From the NCBI RefSeq assembly GCF_006345805.1, contig NC_042998.1:134850001-134914000 (forward strand): DNA of 64,000 nt. The letters are read 5' to 3'. The position numbers and the translations under genes are program-made. The notes under the pieces were generated by a model that was not told where the DNA came from, searched no databases, and was given only the letters and a program-made list of their open reading frames with translations. Source of the DNA: Octopus sinensis (taxonomy: Eukaryota). Positions 37,327 to 62,857 of this stretch are shown here, one piece after another. Numbering within the stretch: the stretch's first letter is position 1; each line of letters begins with the position of its first letter.

Positions 37327-38350
37327 ATGGCACACCACGCTAAATTTACTCTCAATCTCCGAAAAGAAATTGTCAAGATGACAGTTTCAGGAATGTCTCG
37401 CTCGGTATTTCACGAGACGGAAGGAGATCTAATAGTGTAGCTTCATGTGTTCTTAAGCTCTATGAAGAAACTAAAGGATTTGAACCAAAAAAGACAACTG
37501 GTAGACCACGTAAAACCCCCATGTGAGATAATGGAGCCATGAAACGGTACGTATTGAAGGATACTTTCGAGACTGCGGCTGGAATTTCTAAGAAAATAAA
37601 ATAAAATAATGGTATGGATGGGAGCCGCTTTACAGCGTGTCGTCGTCTGAAGGAATCTGGATTAAAAACTTGTTCCCCGGCAACGAAACCAACCATCAGC
37701 AAGAAGAACAAGTTGGAAAGGCTTTCGTTTCCAGAACTCATGTGAACTGGAGAGATGTAAATTGGTCAAAAGTTCATTTTAGCGATGAAAGCAAATTCAA
37801 TTTACTAGGTTCATACGGTAGACAGCATGTTAGGCGCATCACAGGAGATCGGCTAAAATCCAAGTGTCTGAAGAAATCTGCCAAGTTTAAAGGAGGAAGC
37901 GTCAGTGTGTGGGGAATGATTTCTTCTGAAGGAGTTGGCCCTCTAGTGCAGATTAAAGAGACTATTAATGCAAATATCTATTTAAATTTGGTTAAACAGC
38001 ATGTGATCCTATCGTTACGAACATTTCCAAATCAACCGTGCATTTTCATGCAAGATAATGCCCCTTGTCATACTGCAAGGCCTGTCACTGGATTCTTTAG
38101 TGAACAAAATATCCAAGCAAGGAGGTGGCCAGCACAAAGTCCAGGCTTAAATCCAATTGAAAACCTTTGGAAGATACTTGGAGATAATGTAATACAAAGG
38201 GTACCAACTACTACGACGAATTTATGGGAGATATAAGAGGAATGGAAGAAAGTAACACCTGACTTGTGCAGGAAACTTGTTATGTCCTGTGGCAATTGAT
38301 GTGCAGAGGTGATCGGATCGCCAAGAAAGGTCTACAAACATCATACGAAG
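37327..38350 (+). pseudogene. Frameshifted Tc1 DD34E transposase
   Basis: GRPRKT, VHFSDESKFNL, FMQDNAPCH, WPAQSPGLNPIENLW. Confidence 0.9.
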
Positions 38351-43563: not shown

Positions 43564-43776
43564 TACACACACACATACATACACACACACATACATACAC
43601 ACACACATACATACATACATATATATACATACATACATATACATACATACATACACACACACATACACACACACACAGTATTGAAGCTTGAGAACAATCA
43701 GATACATTTGCAACACATCTGTTGAAAATATTATTGTTCACACACATACATATACATATATACATACAGACAGACA

Positions 43777-43822
<46 letters not shown>

Positions 43823-45294
43823 ATCCAGCATGGCCACAACCTCAAGGCTGAAACATATAAAAGAATAACAGAATATAAATGTGTGCAAAGTACAAGAAAT
43901 ATTAATGCAGTATATGGGGATTGGACAATAAGCGTAAGGCAGTGTCAATGGTGGTTCCAGAAATCCCGAGCCATAAACTACAGCCTAGAAGACGAGCCTC
44001 ATCCTGAAAGATCTGTAGAACTCGACAAGGACATCCTGAAAACCATGGTGGAACAAAATATCATCGTAACTGTTGAGGAACTAGCAGAGAAGCTTGGATT
44101 TGGTCATTCAACCATTCATTGAGACCTGTGTGCTATCGGAAAAGTCAGCAAATTGGGTCAATGGGTTCCTCACGAACTTTCCGAGTCTAATTGCATGCAG
44201 AGAGTGAATGTATGCTTTTCTTTGCTGTCATATCTCACCACTACTGCGCTATGTATATCTATATATATAAAACTGTAGTTGTGTGAGTGTCTGTCCCCTT
44301 CGATTTAGATTCCTAACTACTCCCACATTTTGCGGTACAGTTTAACCAAATTCGGGTAGCTTATAGTCGTGATTCATATCGAGCCCGTCTGGGTATTAGC
44401 GCGCGTCTACGATGAGTCTACGATTTTAAAAATAATTTAACATCATTTTTTATTCCATTTTAATGCATAATTTTTCGTGTGTCGATGGCGGCGGAGTTGG
44501 CGTCCACGCTCACACCTGCACCTGTGGGGAAGGGAGTGTAAGGAAATCAACGTCGTAATGCGTTGTCAAGGAGACCAGTGTTCTTTTAGAACGACTTCAT
44601 GGCTTGAAGACACCAAAACAGAAATGGCTAAGAAAGCGTCTACATGAGTCTACGATTTAAAAAAAAATTTACCATCGTTTTTTTTCCATTTTAATGCATT
44701 TTTTCGCTATTATATAAGGGAAGTAACTCTCTAAAAATGTCTACGATGAGTCAACGATTTAAAAAAAAATTTACCATCATTTTTTCCTATTTTTTGGCTA
44801 TAACTCTCTAAAAATGGTTTATAGTTATTTCCCTTACAAACCCGAGCAACGCCGGGCGATACTGCTAGTCTTATTATAAAAGGCAGATTTTATCTGCCTC
44901 CCTTTGGGAGTTATACAAATCTACAATATAGGATTTCTTCAATTACAATTTACCTAGCAATTTTAAGAGTACAATGCATCGCGTCATGCCAGGTCCAGTT
45001 TTTAAAATTTAAACTCCAATTAAGCAAAATTTACAGAAAACTCACATTCTGGTGTGTGTGTCAAATGCTTTTCTTAGTCTGGTTTACACCACACGCAAAC
45101 GCACACACACAGTGGGCAACGAATAAAGTGAAACTAGATGTAATATTTGTTTCTCTCTATCACGCTGATAGATACATGAGTAAAATGTATGGGAAGCTAA
45201 CACATAAGTGTGAGTGAAAATGTTCTTGGAAGAGAGTAAATAGCCAGAGATAGTGATTTGAGGAACACTCATACATACATACAACATACATACA

Positions 45295-49136: not shown

Positions 49137-49865
49137 AACTGCATGCAGGTATACCGTGGATTCGATCCTCGATAGCCAAATTTCACTTAACAGTTCAGCT
49201 CCACTTTTCTCGCGGTAAAACAGTAGTTTTTCTGTGAGTGACGGCTGTTACATTTGCCAGATGCCTTCGCTAAGCCTTCTAACCCTTCTAACCTTTTCTA
49301 GGCCTCCATAAACTAGAATAGAGATAACAGAACGCCAACGAGATCTATTGTTCTCAACAATATTCTTCTAGCTTGTTTTGGATAGTTATAAATACTAGAA
49401 TTTGGTAACACAAAATCAATTAGTGAGAACGACCATCAGTTAGCGAACAGAGATCAACGACTCATGGTCACAAGCAGGCAACCACAATCGGCCAGAGGGA
49501 GAAAGAGGGTTACAACCAGCCAACTATGAGACACAACTTCCTTCGACTTTATAACTTTCACTTGCTCACTTTCTTTTCTCTTACGACATCATGCTATCTC
49601 TGTCTATGGTTTACTACTACAATAAGCACGTGTACACACATACCGGCCGAAATTAACTCTTTTTGCCTCGGATGCTTTTCCATTTACTAATTATATATAC
49701 CAACCCGTCGTGGTTTTGGATATATATATATAAAGTAACGGTAAATAAATATTTCTATACAACTTCGATCACTGTTCTTCTTTCATCTTGCACATCTGCA
49801 ACAACAACACCCGTTACAATCGCTAACTGCCAACTCCAACATATATCATAATACCAACCGTTACA
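49131..49865 (+). mobile_element. Probable solo LTR in a (TA)/(CATA) tract; diverged relative at about 42220-42790
   Basis: TGTAGT...GTTACA termini; shares ctaaccttttctaggcc...ctagaatagagata with 42240-42320. Confidence 0.55.
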
Positions 49866-49944
49866 TACATACATACATACATACATATATACATACATAC
49901 ATACATACATACATACATACATACATACATACATACATACATGC

Positions 49945-49988
<44 letters not shown>

Positions 49989-51530
49989 ATAAACATCGTT
50001 GCTTATCAATGGTTACCGTTGCGTTAAAAGCATCGTAGGGAAAATTTCTCTGGAGATAGAATGTTTATTCACAGATGAATTGAACTCTGTACAATAGACT
50101 GGTTTTTCTGCAGTCGTTGTTATTGCTATAGACAGTGATGAAGTATATGATCGATCATGTGATAGTCAATTCCACTTAATTGCATAACATCGGTGATTGA
50201 ATATCTTATGCAGTTAACCGGAGTATGCAATTAACCGGATTTGGCTAATAAACGATAAATTACGATACTTCAAAATATTGTCAGTTGCTGTTTAGCTTCA
50301 GGTCAAGCTTTACTCAGTAGATTTATGATCAAAGGTTTTCCAATGAGGACTATCGTGTTTATTTAGTACCTAGAACTTTAAAAGCATATATTGCAAAGAT
50401 ATAATTAATTCGTTATTAATTCATTTTTATACAGCTTCTGTCTATTTTACAATTTTTGCACAGTTTACAAACTATTGCGCACAGGACTTTAAACACTTGT
50501 CATTCATTCACACAAGAATATTCAAGCTAACTTCATAATAAAATCTAGTATATTCAGTTTCATTAGGCGATCGAATCTTAGTTGCTGTTGGAAATAAGTT
50601 CATTTTTGGTATACAATGAACATCCCTTGGATTAAAGTAACTAAAAGAAGGACGTAATATTATATAGTGTGATAGCAAAAGGAAATCATTATCAAACAGT
50701 CTTAAAAGAACAGAAGGTTCACTTAACTCGAAAACTATAACTGCCTCTGTGATTCGAATTTAATCACAAAATCAATCATTTTCTTTTATAATAAAATTTT
50801 CTGTCACTTGCTTTGACTATGGTTCAAGGTATTATCTGTAATTTTCAATGTTCCCAGAAACTTGCAAGAATATAAACATCAGGATTAAACAATCAGTTTC
50901 ATTAACATCTACAAGCTGATCGTCTGCCAACATCTACAAGTTAATCAATCTTCTGCCATGTCATATAACAATATTCAAAGAGCTAAATTCATTATAATAA
51001 CAACGTTGTCTAAGATTCTCAATAACTTTTTGGCTCTTTAGTATATTGTAAAATAATACATTGCACGAATTCATGAGTCCTTAAAGTCCTTATCGAGAAG
51101 CTTCTAATACAACTTTCATCTCTATTTCACTTATGGTGCGGTTTTCCGTTTTTTCTATCTTCGTCCATAAAGAAAATGAAATAGTTCACAATTCATATGC
51201 CTTAACATTTCTGGTAGATCATTGCTAGTATATTTATTGATGTAATTTGAAATCCGACTTATGATTTCTGGAAATTGACAAATGGTAAAAACAAATCAGA
51301 TTAATACCGATCGAAACTTTTCAAATCGTCCAGATTTCGAAATGGAAGGTGTAAACATTACTTGCTCGATCTTAAATGAAGTCTTCTGAAAGAATTAACA
51401 CTGTATTTTGAGGGGCATGAAAACTTTACGTTTCTTCTTTTATCGGAGAAAACGAAAACAGAACATTTCAAAAACAGACACTCCTTGGTAATCTAAAAAC
51501 TTCGCCCCACAAAGTTACCTTTCGATTACC

Positions 51531-51750
51531 AAAGTATCCACAATGTCTTGTAATCAAAATATCCACAACGTTTAGATATTTTTCGATATTGAAAATATCT
51601 TCAACGTTCAGATTATTTCTTGATATTGAAAATAACCACAATGTCTAGATATTTCTCAAGAATCAAGTATCTAACAACGTCTAGTTCCCGGTTCTCAAAG
51701 AATCCGCAATATCTGGATACTTATCGATAATGAAAATATCCACTCTGGGT
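51531..51750. repeat. About 36-bp degenerate minisatellite (about 6 units) just 3' of the OTU stop codon
   Basis: Repeated aaaatatccacaa(c/t)gt..agata.ttt... Confidence 0.8.
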
Positions 51751-51755
51751 AGCTT

Positions 51756-52391
51756 TCAGAAGAATTTCAAGAAATTACCACGTGAAAATGGTGGGGGATA
51801 ATCTGTATTATCGAATTGATCACAAGGAACAATCCTATCGAAATGTGTTCCTTCTGTATGACATAATAATATATATGATTTGTCATTTTTCGGAGACTTC
51901 GTGGGTTTAAAATGATACCATTGGTATTTTTTGTTTATAACAGGCGTAAAAAGGTAAATAGTTTCCCCTGTAAATTGAGCAGCTGCAAATACCTCCGCAG
52001 TAGTAGCCCAAACTTTGTTCATACGCATTTTATCTACATGCTCCTCTATACTTTCATTATCGTCTAAAAACTTTATGTAATGTAGAGGCTTCGTTTCTAT
52101 TAGATCGACTATTTTGTTCCTGTAGGATATATGATGTTTTTCAACTCCTGATATTTCTTTACTCAGGGCTCTAAAAAAACAATTGCCATCTCCTGATATA
52201 AAGTCGATTCGACGTTCAATTTTAGCTAAAATACGTTCTAGCTGGATGTAAGATTTATCCCTTGGTGGGATTCGAATCTTTGAGGAATTATGTGATGAAC
52301 CAGACGAGTTTTCTGATGCCCGCCCAATTGAACTGGAACGGTGTCTTCTTTTCGTTGGTATATCGCATCTAGTAGCCTCTCTTCGTTTCAT
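51756..52391 (-). CDS. Intronless OTU-family cysteine protease (putative deubiquitinase), 211 aa
   Basis: ISGDGNCFFRALS (Asp/Cys loop), W-ATTAE, HFD (His loop); no stops or frameshifts; an in-frame stop 4 codons upstream fixes the ATG. Confidence 0.85.
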   Translation of the reverse strand: MKRREATRCDIPTKRRHRSSSIGRASENSSGSSHNSSKIRIPPRDKSYIQLERILAKIERRIDFISGDGNCFFRALSKEISGVEKHHISYRNKIVDLIETKPLHYIKFLDDNESIEEHVDKMRMNKVWATTAEVFAAAQFTGETIYLFTPVINKKYQWYHFKPTKSPKNDKSYILLCHTEGTHFDRIVPCDQFDNTDYPPPFSRGNFLKFF

Positions 52392-53752
52392 TGAGTATAT
52401 TTAATTTTGTTGCTGTCTTCTGCTGCTAGCTTAAAAGACAAAGCTAGTTATGACGAAAGAACCATTAATTTGTCTAACCAAAGGGGAAATTATTGTATTG
52501 CAAGACTCGTTAATCAAGCACAATATATTTCAGGTAAATTACAGTTCTTTGCTGATAAACCTGTTACAAAATACTCTTTGGCATTGCCCGAATTAGCTAC
52601 CATGACTTACTTTCAGACCATGGTTTTTCAAGCTAATCGCCATTAACTTAGTGATATCATTCTTCGTTACATTGCAATAGTGAAGAAACGTCACAATATG
52701 TCGATTATGTCTAATTTACGTCACATTGTGAATTTATTTATAAAAAAAAAAAACACTTGTTTCAAAAATGTCATATTTCTTCGATAATCTCATATTTTTT
52801 CGACTTTGATTGTTTGGTCAAATGTCCCATTAAGTTATTGTCCGCCTAACACATATTCACTATATAAAACATACCATTTGGATTGAAAACTAATTGGTTA
52901 TACAATCATCATTGGCTTTTTCGTCATTACTAAAAAAAAAAACAAACTAAATTCTCGTTTTCAATTTTGAATTTTTTAGACAACTTCGATTATCGAGATA
53001 ACGAGACTCAGTAATGTATTCACAAACAACACATACCTAAATAACCAGAATTTTAAAACTCTTCAAAATAAAAATGCATTGGGCGACAAGGAATATGTTA
53101 AGACTAAATACATACATATTTCAAGTTAATGTTCATATTATTCACATTTGTATAACTAGGCACAATAGCTTAGTTTGTAGCATAAAAGGGTTTCAAAATT
53201 TATGACGATTTACTCAACATGTTTATTAATATCTGCAGTGTACACTGTTTGTATATGTAAGTACTGTATTCTATGTTTTACCGTTTGTACAAAATGTTAG
53301 TGGATCCCAGATACATTTGCACACATGCACGCACGCGCACACACATACATACTCACACATACACACATAGACACGCAAATGCAAACATACATACATACAT
53401 ACATACATACATACATACATACATACATACATACATACATACATACATACATACATGAAGCGGATAACTATAGACAACTACATCGAAACCTTCTGCTTCT
53501 ATACCCACGTTATACATTCACATTTATACCAATAATAATTGGCGTACTTGATTTTGTTAGTAAATGCCAAAGTGACGATTTGAAAAGGCTAGAATTGCCA
53601 GAAAAAAAAATTAACCACCTAACTCGCACATTAAAAATGTAATCAATTAGAGGAACAGTAAAAGTATGCAAAACTTTTCTCAAGTTCAAAATGTAACATT
53701 GCTTTTGTTATCTCCATTTCAACGTTGAAGGCTTATATCTTTTTTAGAATTT

Positions 53753-54173
53753 TTGGATCTTTTCGGTTTGAACGGCAGTTTTTAAAAATAATTTCCACGT
53801 AACTAAACAATTTTAGACTTCGTATACAGGTAGAATGTGTTTATAAAATACCTTTTTCTCTTGGCATTATTGAGAAAATTCTATGGTTTGTAAGATATTT
53901 GTTATTTTTTCTTCAATTTCTGCAATTTCAACCAATCAATCACGTCTATTGAAGTGAAAACATTCTGTGCCGTAAGAATATGTCCCTCGTTTAAGAAACA
54001 GATTGGGTTTATTTACATTTCTGATGAAAAAAAAGATATCCTTCCCCTTACCCCTAACCCTAACCCTAAAACAGATTGAAATGCAATAGATCGATACTAG
54101 GGTCATAATTATGGGTGACAATTTCATATGACACCGTTAGAAAATACTGCCGTTCAAACAGAAAATATCCGAA
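53753..54173. mobile_element. Non-autonomous inverted-repeat element (Helentron/HINE- or MITE-like) with internal (CCCTAA)n
   Basis: ttttcggtttgaacggcagttttt / aaaatactgccgttcaaacagaaaa; ccctaa units at 54044-54069. Confidence 0.7.
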
Positions 54174-54826
54174 TTTTTCTTTACAGGAAGAATTCAAATA
54201 CTTAAAAACAAAAGATAATATATTCAGTTTTCCTTTGTACAATACTAAAAAAAAAATATATTGTTTATTGAGCACGCGCATCGGCTTCTGGCTCAGAATG
54301 CATTTTAAAAAAATATTATTTTGGAAAATGATCTATAGCTAGTCCTGACTACAAAATGCATCAACAAACACAGCCGTAGATGTGTCTATTGATGCACTTC
54401 GCAATGAAGTGGTGTGGTTAAATAAGGAAGACCTGAATTCCTGCGAAATTCCACCATCGGATCTGATGATGGTTTCGTTGGCTGAACCTTCAGTGTTACT
54501 GTCAATACTATACATGTTAAAGAATAACGTGCGCGCGCGCGAGTGTGTGGTAAGAAATGCAGAAAACAATGTTGGTATTCTTATGCTTTCTTATGCGCAT
54601 ATTTCGATGAGTCAGCAGCTCACTTCCTCGATATTTTCGACTCAGATACTGCACTTTAAGCTTATCTATTGATGTGGTGATTGAATTCACGGCGTGGGAT
54701 TTTGGAGTTTAATCCCCATACTGAGCTCTAAACTCACTCACATCATCATCATAATCATCATCGTCAGTGGACCATATATCCCAAAAAGAAGCACACTCTA
54801 AACGTCAGTGCAGTAATGTATTTACA

Positions 54827-61600: not shown

Positions 61601-62119
61601 ACCCATAACGGGCCAACAGAGAAGGACATGCATCACATTGGGGACATAAAATATATGATATAATGGAAGATGAAAAAAATGTTTTTGTGTTGTCCCTGTT
61701 ATGTAATCATCACAACAAACATGAACAATCAACGTTGCCCATTGTCTCCCTTGATACAAGGACATTCAGTAAGTTTCCCGCCACAACAAATACCTTGTAC
61801 AACAACGGCAGTCTAATAAAGTATCTCGTATCGTTAACACGTTTTTTCAGTCTCTCTCATTTTCTTAATCTTTCATACTAAGTACTCACTACTTCCTTTA
61901 ATACACAATACATCATATATATATAACAACAACAGTCCCTTCTCTATTGAGGCCTTGTGCCTAATTAAAGTAATAAGGACGTGGGCGTTGCCGTTTGTGC
62001 TTTGTTTGAGTTAGTGAGTTGGCAGTGTATATCCTTGTAAGTACCGTTTTTGTTTAACTGTTATTTATTGAATTGTGGAATTGTTGTTACCTGTTGAACT
62101 TGTTACCGTTTCCCCATTT

Positions 62120-62857
62120 ATGAGTGAAGTCGTGAATAATATGGAAAGTACACCAGTACAAGCGGGCAGTTATGCTGCGGTGACTGGCAAAGGCCTGTCA
62201 GCGAAGCTACTGCAGGTTACAGAAATTAAATTACAAGAGAGAGACTTTAAAAAATACAATGATTTGTTGAGAAAGGAGAGAGATAGCCTGAGGCTGACGC
62301 TTCCCAAAGAAGTAACAGATAAAACGGAGAAGGTAACAATTCTGTCCAGAACATTAAAAATTGCAACAAAAAAGGTGGAAATAGCAGCGGAGGAGGCGGT
62401 CGAGGAGTGCTTCAGAGAAATTAAGAACATAACGACGTTCTGCACCAGAGGAAGGAAATATGGCACAGTGGAGGTACGCTTCGTGAATGAAGCAGAAGCG
62501 AGAAAATACTCCACTGTGCCTTTGAGATCAGCGGAGTGGGCACTACTACTGATTTACTGTGGCAAACGCGCGGCCAGAGTAAGAATAGGTAGAGTTCCCA
62601 CAGAAATTGATGAGGCGTGGCTGGTGGTAACCATCCTATTCAACACAGAAGAGGACACTGAGATAATAAAAATATCAAGAACTGCTGGGGGGTATGGACT
62701 AAAGTTATTGGTCCATATAAGCTTGCCAGATCTCCACAAGATTGCGGAAGAACTGATACTGCCAGACGAAGCAAGGTTGAGAATAGTGGTGGAAGGAAGA
62801 CTGCCTGTATGTTTTATTTGTGGAGTAAAAGGACATATGAAAGCTAAGTGTCCCTAG
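62120..62857 (+). CDS. Gag-like ORF1 of a Tx1/L1-type non-LTR element (probably truncated)
   Basis: SYAAV motif, RRM-like region, CCHC knuckle CFICGVKGHMKAKC followed by a stop; Glu/Lys-rich tail continues in low-complexity sequence. Confidence 0.7.
   Translation: MSEVVNNMESTPVQAGSYAAVTGKGLSAKLLQVTEIKLQERDFKKYNDLLRKERDSLRLTLPKEVTDKTEKVTILSRTLKIATKKVEIAAEEAVEECFREIKNITTFCTRGRKYGTVEVRFVNEAEARKYSTVPLRSAEWALLLIYCGKRAARVRIGRVPTEIDEAWLVVTILFNTEEDTEIIKISRTAGGYGLKLLVHISLPDLHKIAEELILPDEARLRIVVEGRLPVCFICGVKGHMKAKCP

What the first reader, a model, noticed from the sequence alone, without database searches (positions are those of the whole stretch)
51756..52391. Intact intronless OTU deubiquitinase-like gene isolated in a transposon-rich desert
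Seen: a clean 211-aa ORF with the complete Asp-Cys-His OTU catalytic set and a basic/Ser-rich N-terminus resembling an NLS. It lies in about 3 kb of unique CpG-retaining sequence, while every neighbouring TE ORF is broken. A possible 5'UTR intron (donor aaa|gtaagt at 52611, acceptor about 52430) hints at real transcription. Established: OTU domains are carried by some Helitrons and other large DNA transposons and by viruses. Inference: a domesticated TE/viral OTU, a retrogene, or a member of a cephalopod-specific OTU expansion.
Basis: partly seen in the sequence, partly recalled or inferred. Interest (0 to 1): 0.7.

Follow-up and report, generated by a model that had tools for sequence, protein, structure and literature searches.

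The report
Conserved single-exon OTU deubiquitinase gene in octopods
The 211-codon reading frame is a real, selectively maintained gene for a small ubiquitin-cleaving (OTU-type) protease that belongs to a tiny octopod-only gene family; it is a low-copy host gene rather than transposon cargo, and it is only moderately unusual.

Summary
The ORF at 51756-52391 (minus strand, 211 aa) is real. It matches Pfam OTU above the curated cut-off, and Asp68, Cys71, His183 and Asp185 are invariant in all relatives. It models as an OTU fold closest to OTUD3, OTUD1 and OTUD5.

It is under strong purifying selection. dN/dS is 0.07-0.10 against a collinear orthologue from a close species and 0.03-0.05 against the 211-aa Argonauta hians gene, where dS is saturated.

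A 106-nt non-coding block upstream (52523-52628) is 91% identical to A. hians. All nine family genes carry a CRE-like TRTGACGTMA motif 150-335 nt before the ATG.

In 5.8 billion proteins the family has only eight 90% clusters, two of them annotated in A. hians. No transposase or Rep/helicase lies beside any copy examined, so it is not ordinary TE cargo.

It is not an OTUD3 orthologue. Its nearest outside relatives are stand-alone mollusc OTU genes at 38-44% identity. The same clade also occurs fused to Helitron, hAT and LTR-element proteins, so a TE-derived origin is possible but unresolved.

The proposed 5'UTR intron has conserved splice motifs but no RNA evidence. CpG retention spans 34 kb and is not special to the gene.

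Verdict: a new member of a known kind, of moderate-to-low interest.

The parts
51756..52391 (-). Complete coding sequence (211 codons plus TGA) of a stand-alone OTU-family cysteine protease
   Evidence: ORF list and sequence. Pfam OTU. 98% and 88% identical orthologues of the same length. dN/dS 0.03-0.10. 23 of 29 and 92 of 131 nucleotide differences fall at third codon positions.
52257..52391 (-). Codons 1-45: basic and Ser-rich, disordered N-terminal region with a KRRHR patch (residues 14-18) conserved in the A. hians orthologue
   Evidence: Composition counted by eye from the translation. pLDDT below 50 for residues 1-40. This region evolves about 3 times faster than the domain: 12 of 45 residues differ from A. 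hians here, against 14 of 166 elsewhere. It is not alignable among paralogues.
51792..52220 (-). OTU catalytic domain (about residues 58-200). Cys loop GDGNCFFRA with Asp68 and Cys71 (Cys codon 52181-52179). His loop HFD with His183 and Asp185 (His codon 51845-51843).
   Evidence: Invariant columns in the alignment of 11 relatives. PDB sequence matches to OTUD3, OTUD1 and nairovirus vOTUs. AlphaFold core pLDDT 81-94. Foldseek top hit OTUD3 4bou, E=6.8e-9, TM 0.73.
51759..51791 (-). Conserved C-terminal tail (residues 201-211) of the motif FDNxDYPPPxSRGNFLK, specific to the octopod family and partly shared with mollusc relatives (CNC..PP)
   Evidence: D194, N195, G205 and L208 are invariant in the family. 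Domain alignment. Low model confidence for residues 203-211.
52523..52628 (-). Conserved non-coding block upstream of the ATG; it contains the candidate splice donor
   Evidence: 98-99% identical to the close species. About 91% identical to A. hians although synonymous sites are saturated. All three minus-strand frames have stops, and the substitutions show no 3-nt periodicity (both read by eye). No Rfam match. No significant RNA fold. Absent upstream of paralogues.
52718..52723 (-). CRE-like motif TGACGTAA (first of two), 332 nt upstream of the ATG
   Evidence: Conserved in L001 and A. hians. A TRTGACGTMA motif on the same strand lies 150-335 nt upstream of all nine family genes. The chance of TGACGT in a 195-nt stretch is 0.028.
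52688..52693 (-). CRE-like motif TGACGT (second copy), 302 nt upstream of the ATG
52430..52610 (-). Candidate 181-nt 5'UTR intron (GTAAGT donor, ttgtcttttAAG acceptor); hypothetical
   Evidence: The motifs are present. The donor is kept as GTGAGT in A. hians and is identical in L001. The acceptor is identical in L001 but not alignable in A. hians, where a CAATAG alternative exists. No RNA evidence.
51531..51740 (-). Degenerate tandem repeat (37-nt unit by Tandem Repeats Finder; 46-nt copies spaced about 70 nt by the repeat finder) just downstream of the stop codon, in the presumed 3'UTR
   Evidence: The nearest AATAAA is 520 nt after the stop and is not positionally conserved in the orthologues.

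Best explanation
This is a functional, low-copy host gene with a single coding exon. It encodes a small stand-alone OTU-family cysteine isopeptidase (deubiquitinase). Inferred mechanism: Cys71 in the GDGNC loop is the nucleophile. His183, oriented by Asp185 in the HFD loop, is the general base. Asp68 precedes the Cys loop as in other OTUs. The enzyme would remove ubiquitin, or a ubiquitin-like modifier, from substrates or chains. The disordered basic and Ser-rich N-terminus and the conserved C-terminal DYPPPxSRGNFLK tail would provide localisation or partner binding. Transcription probably starts near the conserved block at 52523-52628, under control of the CRE/ATF-type TGACGT motifs shared by all family members, possibly with a short 5'UTR intron. 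The gene belongs to a small octopod-restricted family of at least three paralogue lineages. That family sits within a mollusc-wide clade of OTU genes with fast-evolving N-termini. What is shown here: the ORF, the domain, the fold, the invariant catalytic residues, purifying selection, positional orthology, low copy number, and the conserved upstream block and motif. What is inferred: catalytic activity, substrate, promoter function, splicing and biological role.
For: Domain and fold: Pfam OTU. PDB matches to OTUD3, OTUD1 and vOTUs. AlphaFold plus Foldseek give the OTU fold, TM 0.73 to OTUD3. Catalytic residues are invariant in all relatives.

Selection: dN/dS is 0.07-0.10 against L001 and 0.03-0.05 between L001 and A. 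hians, with dS above 1.6. Third-position bias is strong, with binomial P of 1e-9 and 2e-28. The coding sequence is 95% identical to L001 against 84-92% in most flanking 100-nt bins, and L001 is collinear over 3 kb.

Regulatory region: the orthologue-specific upstream block is 91% conserved to A. hians. The CRE-like motif lies upstream of all 9 genes in 4 paralogue lineages.

Copy number and context: only 8 clusters exist in 5.8 billion proteins, with a gap from 359 to 180 bits. The window holds one copy. A. hians has 2 annotated copies beside a thymidine phosphorylase gene and no TE genes. No terminal inverted repeats flank the ORF.
Against: There is no transcript or protein evidence; every public contig found is genomic. 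The model has moderate confidence (mean pLDDT 67). No poly(A) signal is positionally conserved. The family was not found among annotated proteins of other cephalopods, so its breadth is uncertain and the species behind most contigs are unknown. Synteny with the A. hians neighbours (second OTU, TYMP) could not be shown in the window. OTU domains with intact triads can still be inactive or act on other modifiers.
Confidence: 0.75

Rival explanations
1. Origin variant A: the octopod family is a domesticated transposon gene. An OTU module once carried by a Helitron, Ginger, hAT or LTR-type element was captured by the host, lost its TE partner and became a regulated gene.
For: The same OTU clade, including the flanking PPxYxxY and CNC..PP motifs, occurs fused to hAT dimerisation (P0059), LTR-pol RT/RNaseH/integrase (P0062), Helitron RepHel (P0056, P0110, P0041) and IS1595-like DDE (P0253) proteins. 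The window protein scores 77-103 bits against these but only 36-46 bits against canonical OTUD3 fragments. The coding sequence is intronless here and in the chiton and scallop homologues. The literature records OTU in Helitron-like elements and in Ginger1 transposases, including one from the mollusc Aplysia (PMC11417382, PMC2836005).
Against: The nearest relatives are stand-alone mollusc genes at 38-44% identity, not the TE-fused forms at 25-37%. The Biomphalaria homologue has two introns, one inside the OTU domain. The tree gives no supported sister group, with bootstrap at or below 0.4 beyond the family. The opposite direction, TEs capturing a host gene repeatedly, is what the Helitron literature proposes.
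Confidence: 0.3
2. Origin variant B: an old mollusc host OTU gene. The cephalopod copies are shortened descendants (N-terminus reduced from 150-350 to about 45-70 residues), intronless through intron loss or retroposition, then duplicated a few times in octopods.
For: Homologues occur in chiton, gastropods and bivalves, and those examined (Liolophura, Mizuhopecten, Biomphalaria) lie as isolated single loci. They share the same architecture of a variable, unalignable N-terminus plus a C-terminal OTU. One has an intron inside the domain.
Against: There is no poly(A) remnant or target-site duplication to show retroposition. No intron-bearing cephalopod parent gene was found. The mollusc genes are not demonstrably orthologous to one another, and the tree is unresolved.
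Confidence: 0.4
3. The ORF is cargo of a still-mobile or recently mobile transposon, or a decaying relic of one, and not a host gene.
For: The region contains TE fragments. OTU domains are known TE cargo.
Against: There is a single copy in the window, and only 8 clusters are known worldwide. No TE ORF adjoins any of the copies examined in L001-L008 and L011-L014. The nearest reverse-transcriptase gene, in L005, is 7.5 kb away. Homology between paralogues stops at the coding-sequence borders. The position is orthologous in a species with about 12% neutral divergence. dN/dS is at most 0.1 over a saturated dS. No TIRs were found.
Confidence: 0.04
4. An endogenised viral OTU (from a nairovirus-like, iridovirus, baculovirus or herpesvirus-type source).
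For: Viral OTUs appear among sequence and structure matches, with E about 5e-4 by sequence and 6e-7 and weaker by structure.
Against: They are more distant (13-27% identity) than human OTUD3 and far more distant than mollusc cellular homologues. No other viral gene lies nearby.
Confidence: 0.02
5. A conserved but catalytically inactive ubiquitin-binding pseudo-enzyme, or a protease for a different ubiquitin-like modifier.
For: Nothing specific. Some OTUs act on ISG15, NEDD8 or SUMO, and specificity cannot be read from sequence.
Against: All catalytic residues are invariant across about 30-98% identity, which is the opposite of the usual pattern in pseudo-enzymes.
Confidence: 0.1

Closest known systems
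Human OTUD3 (PDB 4bou) and the OTUD1/OTUD5 group of OTU deubiquitinases
   Same: It has the same papain-like OTU fold, Cys-loop DGNC motif and His loop. OTUD3 is the best solved-structure match by sequence (E=4e-8) and by fold (E=7e-9, TM 0.73). The A. hians orthologue is auto-named 'OTUD3-like'.
   Different: Identity is only 22% in the Foldseek structural alignment and roughly a third over the 82 residues of the sequence alignment (estimated by eye). Bona fide invertebrate OTUD3s keep 57-79% identity to human in that same segment. It scores 36-46 bits against OTUD3 fragments but 129-137 bits against mollusc stand-alone genes. It has no UBA-type C-terminal domain. At 211 aa it is much shorter, and it has a family-specific C-terminal tail.
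Stand-alone mollusc OTU proteins, such as Liolophura XP_064617771.1, Mizuhopecten XP_021358090.1, Haliotis XP_046339917.1 and Biomphalaria XP_013094684.2 ('OVARIAN TUMOR DOMAIN-containing deubiquitinating enzyme 6/10-like')
   Same: These are the closest relatives outside octopods: 38-44% identity across the domain, 150-180 bits to the family profile, and a shared C-terminal extension. They have the same layout of a variable N-terminus plus a C-terminal OTU. Several have single-exon coding sequences.
   Different: Their N-termini are 150-350 residues long, against 45-70 in octopods. The Biomphalaria gene has introns. No TGACGT motif lies within 600 nt upstream in the three loci checked. None has been characterised.
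OTU modules of transposable elements (Helitron-like elements, Ginger1, hAT- and LTR-fused forms)
   Same: They belong to the same OTU clade, at 25-37% identity, and some share the flanking motifs. OTU as TE cargo is established in the literature.
   Different: Here there is no Rep/helicase, transposase or integrase, no termini and low copy number. There is long-term positional conservation, strong purifying selection and a private conserved promoter region.
CXXC zinc finger-OTU fusion proteins from marine metagenomes (P0008, P0011, P0249)
   Same: The OTU domain is 33-36% identical, and these are among the highest-scoring non-octopod hits.
   Different: They carry an N-terminal CXXC (unmethylated-CpG-binding type) zinc finger that is absent here. 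The source organism is unknown.

Membership tests
OTU superfamily of cysteine proteases (Pfam PF02338) | Significant match to the family profile above the curated threshold | tested here: met
   32.6 bits against a cut-off of 23.3, E=1.3e-7.
OTU superfamily of cysteine proteases (Pfam PF02338) | Catalytic Cys in a D-G-N-C type loop, and His (plus Asp/Asn) in the C-terminal His loop | tested here: met
   Asp68, Cys71, His183 and Asp185 are invariant in all aligned relatives.
OTU superfamily of cysteine proteases (Pfam PF02338) | OTU alpha/beta fold | tested here: met
   In the AlphaFold model the core has pLDDT 81-94. The top 50 Foldseek PDB hits are all OTU domains, the best being OTUD3 with TM 0.73.
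OTU superfamily of cysteine proteases (Pfam PF02338) | Isopeptidase activity towards ubiquitin or ubiquitin-like modifiers | not testable with these tools
   This needs a biochemical assay.
OTUD3 orthologue group | High conservation of the OTU core with OTUD3 of other animals | tested here: not met
   Canonical OTUD3 fragments from hemichordate, reptile and other animals are 57-98% identical to the human segment. This protein is 22-31% identical by BLASTP (36-46 bits) and is closer to other groups.
OTUD3 orthologue group | C-terminal UBA-like domain after the OTU domain (from general knowledge of OTUD3) | tested here: not met
   The protein ends 11 residues after the OTU region and has no other Pfam domain.
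Transposon-borne OTU (Helitron, Ginger1, hAT or LTR cargo) | Fusion to, or adjacency with, Rep/helicase, transposase or integrase within one element | tested here: not met
   No such ORF lies next to the gene in the window or in the related loci examined (L001-L008, L011-L014).
Transposon-borne OTU (Helitron, Ginger1, hAT or LTR cargo) | Multiple dispersed near-identical copies with shared termini | tested here: not met
   There is one copy in 64 kb and 8 clusters in all public proteins. Paralogue homology is confined to the coding sequence. No TIRs were found. The whole genome of the source species could not be searched.
Processed retrogene | Intronless copy of an intron-bearing parent, with a poly(A) remnant and target-site duplications | tested here: inconclusive
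   The coding sequence is intronless, and a distant homologue in Biomphalaria has introns. No poly(A) tract or flanking direct repeats were seen, and no cephalopod parent gene was found. The age of the gene (saturated dS) would have erased such marks.
Viral OTU (vOTU) | Embedded in a viral polyprotein or viral genome context, with closest relatives viral | tested here: not met
   Viral matches are weaker than cellular ones, and the neighbourhood has no viral genes.

The most novel reading that the evidence does not exclude
An octopod-restricted family of miniature OTU deubiquitinases, recruited from the OTU module that circulates among mollusc transposons. The family would have kept a common CRE/ATF-responsive promoter through its duplications and would act as an inducible regulator, for example in stress or innate-immune signalling, or in restraining the very abundant transposons of cephalopod genomes.
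Probability: 0.2. Interest if true: 0.5.

Novelty: new member of a known kind. Interest (0 to 1): 0.3.

Why it matters
The result shows that an isolated single-exon ORF in repeat-rich cephalopod DNA is a genuine, selectively maintained gene and not TE debris. It also corrects the automatic label 'OTUD3-like'. It defines a small lineage-specific branch of OTU deubiquitinases with an unusually well-conserved upstream element and a promoter motif shared between paralogues. Finally, it places that branch in a mollusc clade whose OTU domain has moved between host genes and at least four kinds of mobile element. That makes it a modest but clean case for studying gene exchange between transposons and hosts, and lineage-specific ubiquitin signalling in cephalopods. 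It does not reveal a new kind of system.

Tried and rejected
1. A coding exon or ncRNA in the conserved upstream block. Minus-strand frames all have stops and the substitutions show no codon periodicity (both read by eye). There was no Rfam hit, and folds on both strands were not better than shuffles, with z of -1.0 and -1.5 and essentially no covariation. Rejected in favour of a regulatory element.
2. Transcript evidence from Logan contigs. L001/L002, L006-L008 and L011-L014 are collinear with genomic loci, contain the putative intron and end in microsatellites, so they are genomic.
3. Synteny with A. hians neighbours (second OTU 6 kb upstream, thymidine phosphorylase downstream). tblastn and tblastx found neither in the window; only low-complexity noise appeared.
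4. Finding the species behind the SRA runs through the literature: no paper cites them.
5. A search with an OTUD3 segment to fetch a cephalopod OTUD3. It returned only short fragments, usable as a yardstick but not as a full outgroup.
6. Phylogeny to decide between TE-to-host and host-to-TE transfer. A neighbour-joining tree with 200 bootstraps supports only the octopod clade; deeper nodes have support at or below 0.4.
7. mir-297, mir-1277 and snoRNA hits at 53246-53465 are artefacts of an (ACAT)n microsatellite and lie far below the gathering scores.
8. TIR or TSD search around the gene: only microsatellite-derived and short chance matches.
9. N-terminal regions of the longer mollusc homologues: no Pfam domains and no similarity beyond close relatives.
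Full report
**1. The observation**

The minus strand of the window carries an ATG-to-TGA reading frame at 51756-52391 of 211 codons. It is bounded 5 codons upstream by an in-frame TAA. Apart from the gag-like 260-aa ORF at 62075-62857, it is the longest ORF in the 64 kb that is not low-complexity sequence.

Pfam places it in the OTU family: PF02338, 32.6 bits against a curated cut-off of 23.3. The best solved-structure relatives by sequence are the OTU domains of human OTUD3 (E=4e-8) and OTUD1, followed by nairovirus L-protein OTUs.

- Asp68 and Cys71 lie in GDGNCFFRA.
- His183 and Asp185 lie in HFD.
- All four are invariant in every relative aligned.

An AlphaFold model built from ten family sequences has mean pLDDT 67. 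The core (residues 71-150) is confident at 81-94, and residues 1-40 are disordered. All 50 best Foldseek matches in the PDB are OTU domains, led by OTUD3 (TM 0.73).

The N-terminus is basic and Ser-rich as stated, by my count from the translation.

One part of the observation does not hold as an argument. CpG observed/expected is about 1 around the gene, but it is 0.55-1.35 over the whole of 30001-64000, TE fragments included. It drops to 0.07-0.45 over 1-30000. CpG retention is therefore a property of a 34-kb domain, not of the gene. The stretch without intra-window repeats is 49398-54761, about 5.4 kb.

**2. Is it a live gene?**

Three independent lines say yes.

(a) Orthologues. A public assembly of SRA runs SRR11869385 and SRR11869390 contains a contig (L001). 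It is collinear with window 53337-50325 and encodes a 211-aa protein 98% identical to the window's. The chromosome-level Argonauta hians assembly encodes a 211-aa protein 88% identical, annotated 'OTU domain-containing protein 3-like'.

(b) Selection.
- Against L001, most flanking 100-nt bins are 84-92% identical, while the coding sequence is 95% identical.
- 23 of the 29 coding differences fall at third codon positions, and dN/dS is 0.07-0.10.
- Against A. hians, synonymous sites are saturated (dS above 1.6 for L001 against A. hians). Even so, only 26 residues differ from the window protein.
- 92 of 131 nucleotide differences are at third positions, and dN/dS is 0.03-0.05.
- The N-terminal 45 residues evolve about three times faster than the rest but are still conserved between orthologues.

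(c) Conserved non-coding sequence. A 106-nt block at 52523-52628 is 98-99% identical to L001 and about 91% identical to A. hians. That is higher than the 79% identity of the coding sequence itself.
- The block has stops in all three minus-strand frames, and its substitutions show no three-base periodicity (my reading).
- It has no Rfam match, and neither strand folds better than shuffled controls.
- It is not found upstream of paralogues.
- I read it as a proximal promoter, 5'UTR or first-intron regulatory element private to this orthologue. This is inference.

**3. The gene model**

The donor lies inside the conserved block. It is kept as GTGAGT in A. hians, a change that preserves the consensus. 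The acceptor is identical in L001 but not alignable in A. hians, where a CAATAG|G candidate exists. The 181-nt 5'UTR intron (52610-52430) is therefore plausible but untested.

All public contigs found are genomic: they are collinear, retain the 'intron' and end in microsatellites.

No poly(A) signal is positionally conserved. The nearest AATAAA in the window is 520 nt after the stop. A degenerate tandem repeat fills 51531-51740, just after the stop.

**4. A shared promoter motif**

All nine family genes, representing four paralogue lineages, carry TRTGACGTMA on the coding strand 150-335 nt upstream of the ATG. This is TGACGTAA or the full palindromic CRE TGACGTCA. The window has two copies, at 52723-52718 and 52693-52688.

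TGACGT occurs on a given strand in only 2.8% of random 195-nt stretches of the window. Four independent occurrences by chance are therefore very unlikely, of order 1e-6. The motif is the classical CREB/ATF bZIP site by general knowledge; whether it is bound was not tested. The three non-cephalopod mollusc loci examined lack it.

**5. Family size and context**

The ORF is not TE cargo.
- A profile of the nine octopod sequences, searched against 5.8 billion proteins, recovers only eight 90%-identity clusters at 359-389 bits. The next hit drops to 180 bits.
- An exhaustive HMMER scan of 1.84 billion 50%-identity representatives shows the same three representatives before the gap.
- A. hians has two annotated members, of 211 and 229 aa. 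They lie 6 kb apart in divergent orientation, next to a thymidine phosphorylase gene, with no TE genes called nearby.
- The window has one copy.
- Other members sit on contigs without adjoining TE genes. The only reverse-transcriptase gene, in L005, is 7.5 kb away.
- Similarity between paralogues ends at the coding-sequence borders.
- No inverted terminal repeats or target-site duplications bracket the gene.

The nine sequences form a clade with 95.5% bootstrap support. Within it, the 211-type orthologues group with P0004-P0007 at 94%, and the 229-type (P0003, P0010) branches outside them.

**6. Wider relatives and origin**

Beyond octopods, the closest proteins are stand-alone OTU proteins of other molluscs. 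They include a chiton (Liolophura), gastropods (Haliotis, Lottia, Gigantopelta, Lymnaea, Biomphalaria, Pomacea) and bivalves (Mizuhopecten, Sinanodonta, Potamilus).
- They are 350-600 aa long with the OTU domain at the C-terminus.
- They are 38-44% identical to the window protein and score 150-180 bits per domain against the family profile.
- Their N-terminal regions have no Pfam domain and are unalignable except between close species. This is the same pattern as the short variable N-termini of the octopod proteins.
- The chiton and scallop genes have single-exon coding sequences. The Biomphalaria gene has two introns, one inside the OTU domain.

The same clade, at 25-37% identity, is also found fused to mobile-element proteins:
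- Helitron RepHel (P0056, P0110, P0041)
- a hAT dimerisation domain (P0059)
- an RT/RNaseH/integrase polyprotein (P0062)
- an IS1595-like DDE domain (P0253)
- an uncharacterised family of about 1,000 aa (P0061 and relatives)
- CXXC zinc fingers, in marine metagenomes

The literature documents OTU as recurrent cargo of Helitron-like elements, interpreted as repeated gene capture, and of Ginger1 transposases, including one in the mollusc Aplysia (PMC11417382, PMC2836005).

My neighbour-joining tree does not resolve which group is sister to the octopod family; support beyond the family is at or below 0.4. The direction of transfer is therefore open. I give about 0.3 to domestication from a TE and about 0.4 to an old mollusc host gene that TEs have captured repeatedly. 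The remainder is undecided.

A viral origin is not supported. Viral OTUs match no better than human ones, at 13-27% identity in the viral structure matches.

**7. Not OTUD3**

The label 'OTUD3-like' reflects only the nearest named hit.
- True OTUD3 proteins of distant animals are 57-98% identical to the human enzyme over the 82-residue segment used as probe.
- The window protein is 22-31% identical to such fragments and scores 36-46 bits.
- By comparison it scores 77-103 bits against TE-fused OTUs and 129-137 bits against mollusc stand-alone genes.
- It also lacks any domain after the OTU core.

**8. Likely mechanism**

What is shown: an intact OTU fold with an invariant catalytic set under strong purifying selection.

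What is inferred: Cys71 attacks the isopeptide bond at the ubiquitin C-terminus, with His183 and Asp185 as base and orienting residue. The disordered basic N-terminus (KRRHR at 14-18, conserved in A. hians) may direct nuclear localisation or substrate choice. The family-specific tail FDNxDYPPPxSRGNFLK may bind a partner. Transcription may be driven by CREB/ATF-type factors.

Linkage preference, substrate and biological role cannot be derived from sequence.

**9. Verdict**

The finding is real and the gene is very probably functional. However, it is a lineage-specific member of a well-known enzyme superfamily, and its orthologue is already present in a public annotation under a misleading name.

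The more interesting aspects are secondary:
- the strongly conserved upstream block;
- the CRE-like motif shared by paralogues;
- membership of an OTU clade that has shuttled between mollusc host genes and several transposon classes.

Novelty: new member of a known kind. Interest: 0.3.

Noticed in passing
window 1-30000 versus 30001-64000: There is a sharp switch in CpG observed/expected at about 30 kb, from 0.07-0.45 on the left to 0.55-1.35 on the right, with similar G+C on both sides. It looks like a boundary between a germline-methylated domain (perhaps the body of a broadly expressed gene) and an unmethylated domain that contains the OTU gene and TE fragments.
   Followed up: partly
window 52523-52628: A 106-nt non-coding block is more conserved between this species and Argonauta hians (about 91%) than the adjacent coding sequence (79%). 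It shows no coding signal, RNA-family match or significant fold.
   Followed up: yes
window 52718-52723 and 52688-52693; L003, L004, L005, L006, L011 and L014 upstream regions: A CRE-like TRTGACGTMA motif lies on the same strand, 150-335 nt upstream of the ATG, in every member of the octopod OTU family, across four paralogue lineages.
   Followed up: partly
window 51531-51740: A degenerate tandem repeat sits immediately downstream of the OTU stop codon, in the presumed 3'UTR. Its unit is about 37 nt by Tandem Repeats Finder, and the repeat finder reports 46-nt copies spaced about 70 nt apart.
   Followed up: no
window 49862-49963 and 53339-53456: Two (TACA)n/(ACAT)n microsatellites bracket the gene 3.4 kb apart. 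The upstream one produces spurious sub-threshold mir-297, mir-1277 and snoRNA hits in Rfam.
   Followed up: yes
window 37637-38236, 43688-44122, 62075-62857: There are truncated mariner/Tc1 transposase pieces (DDE_3; Mos1 HTH fused to microsatellite-derived sequence). There is also a 260-aa gag-like ORF ending in a CCHC zinc knuckle, in a region of higher G+C (43-45%).
   Followed up: partly
L003 3673-4362 (Argonauta hians): A. hians has a second family member (229 aa, 52% identical) 6 kb upstream of the orthologue in divergent orientation, and a thymidine phosphorylase gene downstream. Neither neighbour could be found in the window.
   Followed up: partly
L009 2867-3745, L010 596-1474 (TARA and other marine metagenome contigs; proteins P0008, P0011, P0249): Proteins that join an N-terminal CXXC zinc finger (the type that binds unmethylated CpG) to an OTU domain of this clade. 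The source organism is unknown.
   Followed up: no
proteins P0059, P0062, P0253, P0056, P0110, and P0061/P0072/P0076/P0079/P0083/P0094: The same OTU clade is fused to a hAT dimerisation domain, an LTR-type pol (between RNase H and integrase), an IS1595-like DDE domain and Helitron RepHel. It is also fused to a conserved N-terminal region of about 800 aa with no Pfam match, which may be an undescribed mobile-element protein.
   Followed up: partly
L017 8001-10509 (Biomphalaria glabrata): The Biomphalaria homologue has three coding exons, with one intron inside the OTU domain. The chiton and scallop homologues have single-exon coding sequences.
   Followed up: partly
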